A stretch of DNA of 64,000 bases from Hyaloraphidium curvatum SAG 235-1 (GCA_025558095.1 JAIVFI010000020.1:1-64000), one strand, 5' to 3'. Numbered from the stretch's first letter, positions 1,935-32,307 are shown. Translations and numbers: made by a program. The notes: a model not told the origin generated them from the letters alone.

Positions 1935-3239
1935 CTAGCGCAGCGTATCGATCCACGTCTCGAACATGATCTCCTGCGACAGCTCCGGTAGCAGACCGCC
2001 TATTGCCCCCGTCTCGATCCACCTCTTCCACCTCGCCACCTAGAGCACCTCCGCCGCGAGCAACCCCAGGGTTTCGCGCCTCAGCGCCAGGGAAAGCATG
2101 CGCCCCGACCCCCCCGCGCCAAAGTAGAGCAGCAGGTGCACGAAAGCGCGGCGACGGCGGATCGGGCCTTCGGCGTCGTGCAGCTCGTCCAGGACGGTGG
2201 CGAGGTCGGCGGATCCCGCGCCGGCACCGCCCGAGGCCGCGGCGATGCGCGACAGGAGGAGGCGGAGGCAGAGGAAGAGGTCGCGCCGCTCCCGGAAGCC
2301 CCAGTGGTAATGGGACCCGGCCTCGGAAAGGTCCAGCATCGAGGAAAGCAGGTTTGCGTCCGCCCGCACGACGTCCTGGTCCAAGAGAAGCCGGAGTACA
2401 CCGGGGTTGGGCCAGCGGCGGACCGCGTGTCCGCGTGCCCATGTCGCGATCTCGAGGTGCCCGGCTGCGTCGCCGGGGAAGAAATCTTGAAGCAAGCGGA
2501 GGAAGTACCGCGCTTCCAAGGTCGGACGGGCCGTGTCCAGGATCCCGCGGAGGAAGGGCATCCAGGTACGCGCCGTCGGCCCGTGGCCGTACCGCGCCAG
2601 CTCCTCGTAGGTGGTCCAGCGCCCGCACGCGACGAGCATGGGGCCGTAATCGTGCAGCTGGTCCTCCATGGTGGGGTAGGATGCGAATCTCGAGAAGACC
2701 CCGTCCCATAGGGCCCGGTAACAGCGGCGGCCAGCGTCGCGGCCTTGCTCCAGCTTCTCCGCGTCCTCGGGACGTGGGGAATCGTAGCTCAGCAGGCTGT
2801 CCTCGTGCGCAAGGCTCAGGATGAACTCCTTGGACCTCCCCCGATCGAGCAGGGCGGCGTGCCAGTCGTCGTCCGGGCCGTCGGGAACCAGCTCCGCCCT
2901 GTTCTTGAGCATCCAAGACACAGTGCCGTCGGCGAGCCACATAAGGGCGCGCCGGAACGCGTTCGAAAGGTGGAACGGTCCGATGGGACTGATCCACGCC
3001 TCGAGAAACTGCACGTGGTTGGCGGCGGCCGCGAGATCCGTCGCCGAATAAGAAGTGGGATCTTCGTCGTCGACACGCTCATCTCGCAGTGCGGCGATGA
3101 CGGCTTCCCGTTCCGGCGCGTCGATGGCGGGGACAATGGCGCGCAGCCGCGCGACATCGCCCTTTGCCGCGGCGACGAGGACCGGCGCGGCCTCGCCCGA
3201 GCGGAGCACGAAACGCCGCGCGGTGCTGTTGGAGAACAT
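1935..3239 (-). pseudogene. Family X copy 1 (ankyrin-like N-terminus, C-terminal F-box-like motif), premature stop
   Basis: Starts MFSNSTARRFVLRSGEAAPVLVAAAKGD. An in-frame TAG at 2040-2042 replaces the family's Glu codon (EVL*VARWKRWIETGAIGGLLPELSQEIMFETWIDTLR*). Confidence 0.85.
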
Positions 3240-3380
3240 GCGGCGGACCGGACGGCCCCCGCTTCTTGGCCGTGACGACGGAACTGATCGACGCGTCCGA
3301 ACTCCGTCCTTTGTGGTCCTTTGTTTACTGCGGCCCGCTCGTTCCGCCAACAACTTCGGATCTCTGGATCCGGATGTCAA

Positions 3381-4655
3381 ATGACGCGTTCCTTCGCGTT
3401 CGCCACCCACAACATCTTTGCCCACCGGTGGCTCGCGGAGGAGCGGCTGCTGTACCTTCTTATGAGGACGCTGCCCCGCCTCGGCTGGCCCGACATCCTG
3501 TGCCTCCAGGAGGTCCCGCAAGACCGGCTCGACCTCGTTCGGGAGCACTTGGCCGATCTTTATCACGTTGTGAGCTCGGGCGACGACACCCCGGACGGCT
3601 ACGGCGTGCTGCTCGCGGCCAAGAGGGCTTCGTTCGAACTCCGCGGCGAGCCCGTGATCCACCACTTTGACGGCGCGGGTAGAACAAAGATGGGCAGGAG
3701 ACTCGTCGTCATGAAGCTGCTGCACACGGAGACACGCGTTTCAGTGGTCGCAGCGACCGCCCACCTGGAATCCGAGCCCCGCAACACAGCGAGGCGGGCC
3801 GAGCAGCTCCGGCAGTGCTTCACCGCCCTCGAACCGCACCGCGCGGACAGCGTCGCGCTGCTTGGGATGGACTCCAACCTCGGGGACGGCGAAAGGCCTC
3901 CGATTCCCGAAGGGTTTGCCGACGTCGGCGCAGATTGCGGCCCGACGTGGTTCCTGGACAGGATACCGGGGGCCGATGGTGATGCCCGCGTCCGGTTCGA
4001 CCGGATCTATCTCTCCGTGCCCGCCGATGGCTCTGGAGGAACTGTTCTCGCCGGGCCCTTGGAGAATCTGTCACCACGGGGTGCGCGGGCGCTCAGCGGG
4101 GGCGACACGGAGCGGTTCCACCTGTCGGACCACAACCTGCTCCTCGTCGAGCTCACCGTCAATCCACCGGGCGCGGAGCAGCCCCAGCTCGAGGAGCGGA
4201 CAGCCGCGGCCGCCTCCCGCGCCAGCCTGCTAGCCGATCCCGACCCCATCGACTTTGCCGCCCTGAAATCCGACAGGGAGGTGGCGGCCGCCCGCGCGCT
4301 CGCGCTCGCCGTGGCCGCCAAGGCCGCCGAGCTCGACGCCGCCTTCGTCCCCGTCGCTGCTGGGGGCGGCAGGGACATGCATCTCCGCTACCGCAGCCAC
4401 ATGATGAGGAAGGCGTGGCTGGAGTGGAACACCTCGGGCCCGGTGCCCCCGACCCGGAGGTGGGACGCGGCGCGGGTGTCGGCATGGGACCGTCGTGCGG
4501 AGATGGAGTTCGACGAGGAGGTGTGGGTGTGGTACTTCCACCGCGCCGTGCTCGGGCGGGAGGTGGACTACGATGCCGTGGCGGACATGTGCGAGGCCGA
4601 ACCGGGGATCGTGGGCAGGCTCTATCGGGAGCACGTGGATCCGGCGTTGGAATGA
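3381..4655 (+). CDS. Endonuclease/exonuclease/phosphatase family protein, TDP2-like, with a C-terminal extension
   Basis: EEP motifs ATHNI, PDILCLQEV, ATAHLES, GMDSNL, PTW, RFDRIYL, SDH. ATG at 3381. Confidence 0.85.
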   Translation: MTRSFAFATHNIFAHRWLAEERLLYLLMRTLPRLGWPDILCLQEVPQDRLDLVREHLADLYHVVSSGDDTPDGYGVLLAAKRASFELRGEPVIHHFDGAGRTKMGRRLVVMKLLHTETRVSVVAATAHLESEPRNTARRAEQLRQCFTALEPHRADSVALLGMDSNLGDGERPPIPEGFADVGADCGPTWFLDRIPGADGDARVRFDRIYLSVPADGSGGTVLAGPLENLSPRGARALSGGDTERFHLSDHNLLLVELTVNPPGAEQPQLEERTAAAASRASLLADPDPIDFAALKSDREVAAARALALAVAAKAAELDAAFVPVAAGGGRDMHLRYRSHMMRKAWLEWNTSGPVPPTRRWDAARVSAWDRRAEMEFDEEVWVWYFHRAVLGREVDYDAVADMCEAEPGIVGRLYREHVDPALE

Positions 4656-30921: not shown

Positions 30922-31077
30922 CCTGGGGCAGCAGAGCGGAGTTGATGGGGGGGACGCCAGCCCCGCGAAAAGTCGGCGCTTCAGCTCTCCCCGGCCGGCA
31001 CGAATAGCTCCATATCTCTCCTAAAAGGGCACAATCGACGGAAAAGAGCTCCAGGAGACGCGAGAGCCGGGCCCGCG

Positions 31078-32307
31078 ATGTTCTCCCTGTTGCGCCAACG
31101 CGTGCTGGCGGCCGGCGCGGCTCCCGTGTTGGTCGCCGCCGCAGAGGGGAACGTGGACCTGCTGCGGGAGATTGTGCCGTTGCCGGACGATCCAGAGAGA
31201 GTAGACCGGCTGGCAGCGCTGGGTGTCGCAACATTCTTCGAGCCGGATTTACGCGCGTCATTCGTGGGCAGAGTCGGTTGGTCGGCAACCGACGTGGCCG
31301 CTGCAGGCGGACACGTGGGCTTCCTCGCGGCGTGGGAAGAGCAGGTCGGTCCGTTTGCTCTGGAAAACGCGTTCGTTGCCGCGTTGGTCTGCTTCGCCGA
31401 CACCACTCTCGCCTGGATGTTGGAGAAAGCGGCTGGACTGTCCGACGGTGCCGCCCCGGGCACATGGCTGGGTTCTCTGCGAAACCAGGCAGCTGCGAAA
31501 TGGTACCTCCTGTGTCTGGCTCGGGGCGACTACGAGATGCACGAAGAACGGTGGCCGGATCGGGTGTTGGATGACTCAGAACTCGAAGCCAGCAAAGAAG
31601 CCTGTCGACGATGCTATCGCACTCTGTTTGAGCGGCTCTTCACCGGCTTTGCGACCTATCCCACCATCGAGGACCAGTTCCTTGAAGGCAGCGTAGAGAC
31701 GGCACTTCTTTTTTCCGGTGGCCTTGTGACGTACGGTTCGATCGACGACCCCAAGACTCGTCGCGAGTGCCATGCTTGGTTCGGCGACGAAAAGATCGGG
31801 GACTGGTTCCACCCCACCCTCTTCGAAATGATGCTCGACGAGGGTGTCATCGTCGCGGACGACGACCTGCTCACCACGTGCGTCGGCTTCGGCGGGGGCA
31901 TGGCGATGTACTACACCGACGGCGGACCAGTGGGCGGCGAGTTCCCCGGACGGCGGCACCTCTTCCTGTGCCTCCACTTGGTCTTCCGGCGCGCGTCGGC
32001 CGCCGGCTTCCCGCCGACAGCAGAACACCTCGCCTGGCTCCTCTCTTCGATCTACGAGTCCGAGGCGCCGCACAGGTGCCTGCGCAGCCTGGTCCTGCTG
32101 CTGCTCTTCTACGAAGGCCCGAAGCCGGGAGAGAGGCTAGACAGGTCGACAAAGGAAAATGCCGAGAAGCGATACCGGGGCCTGGTGGAGGACGTGCTCG
32201 AGGTCGCGAGGTGGAGGCGGTGGATCGACAGGGGCTCGCTCGGCGGGCTTCCTCCGGAGCTCACGCAGGAGATCATGTTCCGGACGTGGATCGAGATGCT
32301 GCGATGA
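31078..32307 (+). CDS. Family X copy 10, the only uninterrupted ORF (409 aa), with an apparent in-frame internal deletion
   Basis: Full N- and C-terminal motifs are present, but the GHGPTARTW...RYFLRLLxDFF block (~35-40 aa) found in the other long copies is missing. Confidence 0.85.
   Translation: MFSLLRQRVLAAGAAPVLVAAAEGNVDLLREIVPLPDDPERVDRLAALGVATFFEPDLRASFVGRVGWSATDVAAAGGHVGFLAAWEEQVGPFALENAFVAALVCFADTTLAWMLEKAAGLSDGAAPGTWLGSLRNQAAAKWYLLCLARGDYEMHEERWPDRVLDDSELEASKEACRRCYRTLFERLFTGFATYPTIEDQFLEGSVETALLFSGGLVTYGSIDDPKTRRECHAWFGDEKIGDWFHPTLFEMMLDEGVIVADDDLLTTCVGFGGGMAMYYTDGGPVGGEFPGRRHLFLCLHLVFRRASAAGFPPTAEHLAWLLSSIYESEAPHRCLRSLVLLLLFYEGPKPGERLDRSTKENAEKRYRGLVEDVLEVARWRRWIDRGSLGGLPPELTQEIMFRTWIEMLR

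What the first reader, a model, noticed from the sequence alone, without database searches (positions are those of the whole stretch)
1935..32307. Ten copies of an uncharacterised ankyrin-like, C-terminal F-box-like gene family: a possible fast-evolving SCF adaptor array
Seen: ten intronless paralogues or fragments (1935, 6201, 6302, 6941, 13238, 16147, 20195, 21662, 29622, 31078) on both strands, scattered between unrelated housekeeping genes. They share two ankyrin-like motifs (PVLVAAAxGDV..LR; SATDLAAAGNH..FL) and a variable helical middle. Their most conserved block is the C-terminus YRGLMDDVLEVARWKRWIxxGSIGGLPPELAQEIMFxxW. Known: LPxELxxxI is the F-box core. Cellular F-box proteins usually carry it N-terminally, whereas ankyrin repeats plus a C-terminal F-box (PRANC) is the layout of poxvirus ANK proteins and some intracellular-bacterial effectors that hijack SKP1-cullin1. 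Inference: a lineage-specific family of variable-specificity ubiquitin-ligase adaptors under birth-and-death evolution, used in defence or as effectors, possibly of viral origin.
Basis: partly seen in the sequence, partly recalled or inferred. Interest (0 to 1): 0.85.

Follow-up and report, generated by a model that had tools for sequence, protein, structure and literature searches.

The report
Decaying ankyrin-repeat gene family cluster
A chytrid-like fungus (Hyaloraphidium curvatum) carries, near one chromosome end, ten mostly broken copies of a private ankyrin-repeat protein family whose short conserved tail resembles only the first helix of an F-box, so a role as ubiquitin-ligase adaptors is plausible but unproven.

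Summary
All ten copies sit at the stated coordinates. The genome is Hyaloraphidium curvatum and carries about 30-35 loci of the family; 23 of 24 scored loci lie within 200 kb of a contig end.

The proteins are true ankyrin solenoids by predicted structure (pLDDT 91.7). All 50 best PDB matches are ANK proteins, although Pfam Ank models stay below threshold.

The most conserved part is a roughly 45-residue, two-helix C-terminal tail. Its last helix (GGLPxE[ILV]xxx[IV]M) matches F-box helix 1 in a profile comparison (P 3e-4, above 300 of 300 shuffles). Nothing else is F-box-like:
- no F-box, PRANC or SOCS-box HMM hit;
- the protein ends 12-19 residues after LP;
- no structural match for the tail.

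SKP1 binding could not be settled here.

The window is largely a graveyard, with no canonical intact copy; intact genes lie on other contigs. Lesions concentrate in the tail. Paralogues are old (dS above 1) with omega about 0.5. At least three copies appear transcribed.

Relatives occur only in a Hyaloraphidium-lineage relative and a few metagenomes. None was found in viral or prokaryotic collections.

Verdict: a new ANK family with an unclassified tail. The ligase-adaptor reading has about 0.4 probability. The scan had noted the same family on other DNA of this genome.

The parts
1935..3227 (-). c1: full-length copy. The frame is open upstream to 3740. An in-frame TAG at 2040-2042 sits 36 codons before the natural stop and cuts off the C-terminal tail.
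   Evidence: the public model P0005 ends at this TAG
6201..6311 (-). c2: 36-aa fragment of the tail only. The conserved Trp codon is TAG (6219-6221). It abuts c3 head to head.
6302..6817 (+). c3: C-terminal half of about 170 aa. The tail is intact but the stop codon is lost, so the frame reads on to 6826.
6941..8247 (+). c4: full-length copy with two frameshifts, one near 7578-7609 inside the GHGPT block and one near 8176-8207 inside the LPxE helix.
   Evidence: the public model P0001 fuses c3 and c4
13238..13925 (-). c5: C-terminal part of about 230 aa spread over three frames. The conserved Trp codon is TAG (13256-13258).
16147..17757 (-). c6: open from the second ANK motif to the stop with an intact tail. 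The first repeat lies in another frame, by frameshift or a small intron. Probably transcribed.
   Evidence: transcriptome contigs cover 16382-17179
20155..21522 (-). c7: full-length copy with a single 1-nt frameshift near 20309-20315, at the start of the tail, so the ORF product lacks the tail. Probably transcribed.
   Evidence: a DNA contig covers 20239-20562 without differences and a transcriptome contig covers 20559-21533
21662..22961 (-). c8: full-length pseudogene in tandem with c7. It has several frameshifts and one TGA, and the conserved Trp codon is TAG (21677-21679). Its 3' part is covered by a transcript contig.
29582..29851 (+). c9: fragment of about 90 aa holding the last repeat and the tail.
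31078..32307 (+). c10: the only uninterrupted ATG-to-stop ORF in the window (409 aa, public model P0004). It lacks about 45-50 central residues, the GHGPT...FLRxLxDFF block, that are conserved in other members.

Best explanation
This is a multigene family private to the Hyaloraphidium lineage. Each protein has two parts. The first is a degenerate, quickly diverging ankyrin-repeat solenoid of about 400 residues, which would be the target-binding surface. The second is a constant tail of about 45 residues made of two helices: Y-x-G-[LF]-x-x-D-[VI]-x-E-V-x-x-W-[KR]-R-W, then G-G-L-P-x-E-[ILV]-x-x-x-[IV]-M-x-x-x-W.

The most likely mechanism is a modular adaptor. The variable ANK surface picks different targets. 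The tail docks all members onto one common partner, most probably a cullin-ligase adaptor of the SKP1/Elongin C class, through its F-box-helix-1-like last helix. This is how poxvirus ANK/F-box proteins work, and CP77 does it with a single helix.

The window holds an end-proximal cluster of the family that is mostly decaying, with lesions that often remove just the tail.

Shown: the fold, the motif similarity, the family's distribution, the pseudogene states and probable transcription. Inferred: docking to SKP1 or Elongin C, and any ubiquitin-ligase role.
For: - Fold. The AF2 model has pLDDT 91.7 and pTM 0.89. All 50 best VIA matches are ANK proteins, Z 8.4-12.8, over residues 13-424. The ten listed nearest ESM-Atlas rows all carry Ank families. 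The best full-length matches are ANK+SOCS-box ligase receptors: ASB18 at TM 0.52/0.54 over residues 6-450, and ASB14. The top Foldseek rows are FEM1C, ankyrin-1 and DARPin.
- Conservation. The tail is the conserved part, with 41% mean column identity against 13% overall. The only near-invariant columns across 49 members are L437, P438, E440 and W450.
- F-box helix-1 similarity. hhalign of the tail against 20 F-boxes of the same genome aligns iGGLPpEi..IM to the F-box LPxEll..If, with P 3e-4 and score 20.4. Shuffled controls gave 7.9 +/- 1.8 with a maximum of 16.2, and 0 of 300 reached the real score.
- Possible partners exist. The genome has SKP1 and Elongin C genes and at least 135 F-box loci.
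- Precedent. Poxviral F-boxes are truncated, and CP77 binds Skp1 with helix 1 alone (PMC4353913). ANK proteins with a C-terminal BC box bind Cul-2 (PMC6232478).
- Family dynamics. Ten copies lie in the window and about 30-35 loci in the genome. 23 of 24 loci lie within 200 kb of contig ends, p 2e-6. Omega is about 0.5 in the body and 0.2-0.4 in the tail.
- Expression. Spliced transcriptome contigs cover c6, c7 and c8.
Against: - No F-box, F-box-like, PRANC or SOCS_box HMM hit on full proteins at E<=1, or on 40 isolated tails at E<=10.
- A PF12937 scan of the genome finds at least 135 loci, none in the family.
- A profile search of PDB sequences finds nothing.
- The F-box similarity covers only 15-17 columns. 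The protein ends 12-19 residues after LP, so helices 2 and 3 are absent.
- A circular-permutation reading failed.
- The tail modelled with its last repeats has no F-box or SOCS-box structural neighbour: Foldseek E above 2, VIA best Z 5.8 to generic helical repeats.
- The tail is modelled at pLDDT 95-98 inside the full-length model. This would also fit a purely structural cap of the solenoid.
- The tail occurs almost only with this ANK body, unlike freely shuffled ligase boxes.
Confidence: 0.4

Rival explanations
1. These are plain ankyrin scaffolds. The two C-terminal helices are an integral cap of the solenoid, and their conservation reflects folding rather than docking. The LPxE resemblance to F-box helix 1 is convergence in a short helical motif. 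The family is one of many lineage-specific ANK expansions with no ligase link.
For: The tail is modelled with very high confidence, packed in the full-length model at pLDDT 95-98. No HMM or structural link to any ligase box was found. The tail is never found with other domains. The similarity to the F-box is limited to 15-17 columns.
Against: Capping helices of ANK proteins are usually among the least conserved parts. Here the tail is the best conserved region across subfamilies and across species. The motif match exceeds all 300 shuffles. The near-invariant residues Leu-Pro-x-Glu plus three Trp look more like an interface than a cap.
Confidence: 0.3
2. This is an ASB-like receptor. The tail is a divergent SOCS/BC-box-type module that docks to Elongin C and a Cul2/Cul5-type cullin rather than to SKP1.
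For: The best full-length structural neighbours are ASB18 and ASB14, which are ANK + SOCS box, and their alignments run into the tail to residues 444-450. FEM1 Cul2 receptors top the Foldseek list. An Elongin C gene is present at L050 1411-1884. Helix A begins G-[LF]-x-x-D-[IV]-x-x-[VA], and the distance to the LP motif (22 residues) is, from memory of SOCS-box sequences, in the usual range.
Against: There is no SOCS_box HMM hit on the tails at E<=10, and no canonical SOCS box anywhere in the genome. The BC-box consensus [STP]-L-x-x-x-[CSA]-x-x-x-[AILV] is not met, because the small-residue position holds I/V. The Cul5 box LP-hydrophobic-P is not met, because the family has LPPE. No solved SOCS-box chain appears among the tail's structural matches.
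Confidence: 0.12
3. The constant tail docks to some other common partner or acts as a localisation signal unrelated to cullin ligases. Several distant members end in Cys-containing C-termini such as ...WEQFC and ...WEDCCV.
For: The conserved tail has no classified homologue. Cys-ending variants occur in distant members.
Against: The core subfamily in this window ends without Cys. No positive evidence exists for any particular partner.
Confidence: 0.15
4. The family is the cargo or coding part of a transposon or an integrated virus, which would explain its multiplication.
For: The family is multi-copy and end-proximal with many fragments. One 43-aa fragment sits in a 5.85-kb tandem unit on contig C51.
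Against: Copies are old and divergent, with dS above 1 and a star-like tree whose terminal branches are 0.16-0.9. There is no transposase or viral Pfam domain in members or neighbours. No relatives were found in viral or prokaryotic collections. The neighbours are ordinary metabolic genes.
Confidence: 0.03

Closest known systems
Poxvirus ANK/F-box (PRANC) proteins, especially cowpox CP77
   Same: Both have an ankyrin-repeat body and a short F-box-like motif at the extreme C-terminus. Both form multigene families near genome ends with many truncated, tail-less copies. CP77's F-box is effectively helix 1 only, yet it binds Skp1 (PMC4353913).
   Different: There is no PRANC or F-box HMM match. 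The helix preceding LP (D-V-x-E-V-x-x-W-K-R-W) has no counterpart. This is a cellular fungal family with no viral relatives found. Skp1 binding is not shown.
Metazoan ASB proteins (ankyrin repeat + SOCS box; Cul5 receptors)
   Same: These are the best full-length structural neighbours (ASB18 at TM 0.52/0.54 and ASB14). Both have an ANK body plus a C-terminal helical module of about 40-45 residues. Both are multigene families.
   Different: The SOCS_box HMM and the BC-box and Cul5-box consensus motifs are not met. The family is fungal, not metazoan.
Orthopoxvirus ANK/BC proteins and cellular FEM1 (Cul2 receptors)
   Same: Both have an ANK body with a small C-terminal cullin-adaptor box (PMC6232478). 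FEM1C and FEM1B are top Foldseek rows.
   Different: The Foldseek matches are weak (E>=0.017, TM about 0.28) and driven by the ANK part. No BC box is recognisable.
Canonical cellular F-box proteins (PF00646/PF12937)
   Same: They share the L-P-x-E-[ILV]-x-x-x-[IV]-[ML] helix. The same genome has at least 135 canonical F-box loci.
   Different: Canonical F-boxes are N-terminal, have three helices and span about 45 residues. Here only one helix is present, at the very C-terminus, and it is not detected by the HMMs.

Membership tests
Ankyrin repeat proteins | Stacked helix-turn-helix repeats forming the ANK solenoid fold | tested here: met
   The AF2 model has pLDDT 91.7. All 50 best VIA matches are ANK proteins, Z 8.4-12.8, over residues 13-424. 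The ten listed nearest Atlas rows all carry Ank families.
Ankyrin repeat proteins | Pfam Ank-clan HMM match above the gathering score | tested here: not met
   There is no hit at E<=1 for core members. Only sub-threshold Ank, Ank_2, Ank_3 and Ank_4 hits appear in a few of 49 members. Two large ANK proteins (P0050, P0053) match the family profile weakly.
F-box (PF00646 / PF12937) | HMM match to an F-box family | tested here: not met
   There are no hits on full proteins at E<=1 or on 40 tails at E<=10. The genome scan with PF12937 hits at least 135 loci, none in the family.
F-box (PF00646 / PF12937) | Helix-1 core L-P-x-E-[IL]-x-x-x-I-[LF] | tested here: met
   hhalign against 20 own-genome F-boxes gives P 3e-4 over 15-17 columns. 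0 of 300 column shuffles reach the score.
F-box (PF00646 / PF12937) | Three-helix domain of about 45 residues following LP | tested here: not met
   The protein ends 12-19 residues after LP with a single helix (H439-453). The tail has no F-box structural neighbour. The permuted arrangement was rejected.
F-box (PF00646 / PF12937) | Binding to SKP1 | not testable with these tools
   This needs a pull-down or two-hybrid assay with H. curvatum SKP1 (gene at L043). See Tried and rejected.
PRANC (PF09372) | HMM match to PRANC | tested here: not met
   There is no hit on proteins or tails and none in the genome. The genome scan's control did not ring anywhere, so that scan alone is weak.
PRANC (PF09372) | ANK repeats followed by an F-box-like motif at the extreme C-terminus | tested here: met
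SOCS box / ASB (PF07525) | HMM match to SOCS_box | tested here: not met
   The tails show no hit at E<=10. The best genome hit is E 0.34, elsewhere in the genome.
SOCS box / ASB (PF07525) | BC box [STP]-L-x-x-x-[CSA]-x-x-x-[AILV] and Cul5 box L-P-hydrophobic-P (consensus recalled from the literature) | tested here: not met
   The family consensus is G-[LF]-x-x-D-[IV]-x-x-[VA] and L-P-P-E.
SOCS box / ASB (PF07525) | Binding to Elongin B/C | not tested
   An Elongin C gene is present (L050). It has an intron, so no unspliced reference protein was available.

The most novel reading that the evidence does not exclude
A cellular, fungal family of ankyrin-repeat substrate receptors that plug into cullin-RING ligases through a minimal one-helix F-box at the C-terminus. 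This would be the free-living counterpart of the poxvirus and Orientia ANK/F-box layout, which was thought to be essentially confined to pathogens. Recurrent, possibly selected, loss of the docking tail would create tail-less decoys.
Probability: 0.25. Interest if true: 0.75.

Novelty: new variant of a known kind. Interest (0 to 1): 0.5.

Why it matters
ANK repeats combined with a C-terminal F-box-like motif are known from poxviruses and intracellular bacteria. [quoted passage not shown]

If the tail docks to SKP1 or Elongin C, this would be an independent cellular invention, or a source, of that layout in an early-diverging fungus. It would also define a new minimal ligase-docking module.

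Even if it does not dock, the family is an unannotated module. It lacks a Pfam hit above threshold, yet it has a confident fold and about 35 loci. It gives a clear example of end-proximal birth-and-death evolution in a chytrid-grade fungus.

Tried and rejected
1. Complex prediction. I co-folded a chytrid SKP1 with residues 296-409 of c10. The SKP1 was P0062 from Phlyctochytrium bullatum; by my reading it differs at one residue in the C-terminal, F-box-binding part from the H. curvatum exons. The result was no verdict (runs 0.63, 0.08, 0.01; mark 0.34). It is neither support nor evidence against binding. The host SKP1 and Elongin C genes have in-frame introns.
2. Circular-permutation idea, in which helix A would equal F-box helices 2-3. 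hhalign of the permuted tail and of helix A alone gave nothing beyond the helix-1 match. Rejected.
3. Structural search with the isolated last 124 residues. Foldseek gave E above 2. VIA gave a best Z of 5.8, to generic HEAT/MIF4G-like repeats. Uninformative.
4. Feature search in the ESM Atlas with the last 60 residues gave no usable hit.
5. Viral and prokaryotic origin. Pattern scans of IMG/VR and of 185,579 prokaryotic genomes gave no confirmed relative.
6. Ubiquitin-like neighbours noted by another reader. Pfam at E<=1 found nothing in six candidate ORFs between the copies, so I did not use them as context.
7. Shared descent of the three Trp-to-TAG copies. The tree of the last ~300 nt is star-like and the three do not group. 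Unresolved.
8. Proximity to canonical F-box genes. Two family loci lie within 3 kb of one (C10, C7), which is not more than end-proximal co-enrichment would give. That is a rough estimate, not a formal test.
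Full report
**Source and setting**

The window is the first 64 kb of a 709,540-bp contig, G000:C20. The assembly is 31.9 Mb in 55 contigs with about 65% G+C. The only named database relative of the family is a Hyaloraphidium curvatum protein, DFJ74DRAFT_644180 (P0001). Its sequence is a fused model of two window copies and it lies on a contig of the same length. 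The genome is therefore H. curvatum, an early-diverging (monoblepharid) fungus. A mitochondrial carrier, an EF-1beta fragment and spliced neighbours confirm a eukaryote.

**The observation**

The N-terminal motifs and the C-terminal block are real. Genome-wide, a family profile finds about 30-35 loci and the tail profile finds about 35-40 occurrences. The window holds the largest cluster.

Of 24 distinct loci on contigs of known length, 23 lie within 200 kb of a contig end, against 51% expected (binomial p 2e-6). The mean relative distance to an end is 0.29 against 0.5. One caveat applies: contigs may not be whole chromosomes, and the window start carries no telomere repeat.

**State of the copies**

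None of the ten is a canonical intact gene.
- c10 is the only ATG-to-stop ORF, but it lacks about 45-50 conserved central residues.
- c6 is open from the second motif onward, but its first repeat lies in another frame.
- c1 has one in-frame TAG 36 codons before the stop.
- c7 has one 1-nt frameshift at the start of the tail. A DNA contig from a public run shows the same sequence.
- c4 and c8 have several frameshifts.
- c3, c5, c9 and c2 are C-terminal pieces.
- In c2, c5 and c8 the near-invariant Trp six codons before the stop is TAG.

Canonical intact genes exist on other contigs, at C3:187227-188537 and C9:169745-171103.

Contigs of run X1 carry canonical spliced joints in neighbouring genes, so the run is a transcriptome. 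They cover parts of c6, c7 and c8 without differences. At least these copies are probably transcribed.

**Age and constraint**

Pairwise Nei-Gojobori estimates give dS of about 1.0-1.5, which is saturated. dN is about 0.5-0.7 in the body (omega about 0.4-0.6) and about 0.15-0.3 in the tail (omega about 0.2-0.4). A tree of the last ~300 nt is star-like with long terminal branches. The family is old and loosely constrained, not a recent burst.

**Fold**

Pfam finds nothing at E<=1 in core members. Only sub-threshold Ank-clan hits recur among 49 members.

An AF2 model of an intact member with a 49-sequence alignment is confident, at pLDDT 91.7 and pTM 0.89.
- All 50 best matches among 48,161 PDB representatives are ANK proteins, Z 8.4-12.8, spanning residues 13-424.
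- The top Foldseek rows are FEM1C, ankyrin-1 and DARPins, but at E>=0.017.
- The ten listed nearest ESM-Atlas rows all carry Ank families. The best full-length matches are the ANK+SOCS-box proteins ASB18 (TM 0.52/0.54, residues 6-450) and ASB14.

The ankyrin reading is therefore right, and it applies to the whole body rather than to two motifs.

**The tail**

After the last repeat (G-x-R-G-L-V-R-L-L-L-x-x-G-A-D in distant members) come two helices, residues 415-430 and 439-453. This is the best-conserved part of the family. Mean column identity is 41% in the tail against 13% overall. L437, P438, E440 and W450 are the only near-invariant columns across 49 members.

Tests against known ligase boxes gave these results.
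- No F-box, F-box-like, PRANC or SOCS_box hit on 40 isolated tails even at E<=10.
- No PDB sequence hit.
- A PF12937 genome scan finds at least 135 canonical F-box loci, none in the family.
- No PRANC or SOCS box in the genome.
- A profile-profile comparison with 20 F-boxes of the same genome aligns the last helix and the residues before it to F-box helix 1. Probability is 40-45%, P 2-3e-4, over 15-17 columns. The score of 20.4 exceeds all 300 column-shuffled controls, which gave a mean of 7.9, sd 1.8 and maximum 16.2.
- The preceding helix does not match F-box helices 2-3, and a permuted arrangement gains nothing.
- The last 124 residues modelled alone (pLDDT 86.9) have no F-box or SOCS-box neighbour.
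- The BC-box and Cul5-box consensus motifs are not met.

The tail therefore carries an F-box helix-1-like motif. It is not a member of the F-box, PRANC or SOCS-box families by any tested criterion.

**Possible partners**

SKP1 (two loci) and Elongin C genes are present. Both have in-frame introns. I used a near-identical chytrid SKP1 as a proxy for the single complex job, which returned no verdict (see Tried and rejected).

The review read here states that poxviral F-boxes lack helix 3. It also states that CP77 binds Skp1 with helix 1 alone, and that most Skp1 contacts come from helix 1 and the loop before it (PMC4353913). A second paper shows ANK proteins docking to Cul-2 through a C-terminal BC box (PMC6232478). 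A one-helix docking tail is therefore plausible, but here it is an inference.

**Distribution**

An exhaustive profile search of 1.84 billion representatives gives 54 hits. The named ones are all H. curvatum. Many others come from one Logan assembly, SRR26194948, which has 53-55% G+C. Its acyl-CoA dehydrogenase is 74% identical to that of H. curvatum and at most 48% identical to any other organism's, so it is a relative in the same lineage. A few hits come from metagenome contigs. The genes are also paired or clustered there.

Many sequenced chytrids, Gonapodya included, are in the database searched, yet none gave a named family hit. No viral or prokaryotic relative was found. The tail occurs almost only with this ANK body.

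**Reading**

Shown:
- a lineage-restricted, end-proximal, old and decaying ANK family;
- a constant, unclassified C-terminal module whose last helix resembles F-box helix 1.

Inferred, at about 0.4 probability:
- a modular adaptor that docks to SKP1, or less likely Elongin C.

The main rival, at about 0.3, is that the tail is a structural cap and the resemblance is convergent.

One observation is unexplained. The lesions concentrate in the tail: the c1 stop, the c7 frameshift and three Trp-to-TAG changes. The three TAG copies do not group in the tree. Chance, a mutational hotspot, gene conversion or selection for tail-less forms cannot be told apart here.

Other readers of this scan noted the same family and the TAG pattern on this stretch, and a distant subfamily on another piece of this genome.

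Noticed in passing
window 6219-6221, 13256-13258, 21677-21679 (all - strand): The same near-invariant Trp codon, six codons before the stop, is TAG in three divergent copies (c2, c5, c8). All 19 other motif-bearing copies examined have TGG. The three do not group in a tree, and the TAG of c8 is also present in a transcript contig.
   Followed up: partly
window 2040-2042 (c1) and about 20309-20315 (c7): Two otherwise open full-length copies each carry a single lesion, and both lesions fall at the start of the C-terminal tail. They would yield tail-less ANK bodies. Together with the three TAG copies, five of the ten copies have lesions in the tail.
   Followed up: partly
G000 genome-wide: There is a very large canonical F-box-like (PF12937) complement: at least 135 loci over the cut-off, with only 150 of 263 candidates scored. 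Several lie near family loci, for example C10:108488 and C7:118229.
   Followed up: no
window 6305-8247; protein P0001: The public gene model DFJ74DRAFT_644180 fuses the half-copy c3 with the frameshifted copy c4, using introns that skip conserved coding sequence. It is probably an annotation artefact.
   Followed up: partly
G000:C51:1565-1693, 7424-7552, 13273-13401 and C10:45095-45223: A 43-aa fragment of the family (positions 263-305) sits in a 5.85-kb tandemly repeated unit on a 21.8-kb contig, with one more copy on C10. ORFs of the unit have no Pfam hit.
   Followed up: partly
window 56000-58000: This is an island of 38.5% G+C in a 65% G+C genome. It overlaps a 629-aa ORF (56407-58296, +) that ends in a zf-MYND finger.
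   Followed up: partly
L043 1462-2331 (-) and L050 1411-1884 (+): The SKP1 and Elongin C genes have short introns that stay in frame without stops, so stop-to-stop ORFs read straight through them. This is a trap for ORF-based annotation in this GC-rich genome.
   Followed up: partly
L071 4470-7338; L073 2318-5413; L072 1971-3451: In the related organism (SRR26194948) and on a metagenome contig, family members also sit in adjacent pairs. On one contig (L072) they lie next to canonical Pfam-positive ANK genes.
   Followed up: no
window 18181-18261, 18492-18569, 19869-19924: Three short introns (79, 76 and 54 nt) in neighbouring genes are confirmed by transcriptome contigs. The SDR-like gene at 17836-18862 (-) and the gene at 19088-19924+ are far more deeply covered than the family copies.
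   Followed up: no
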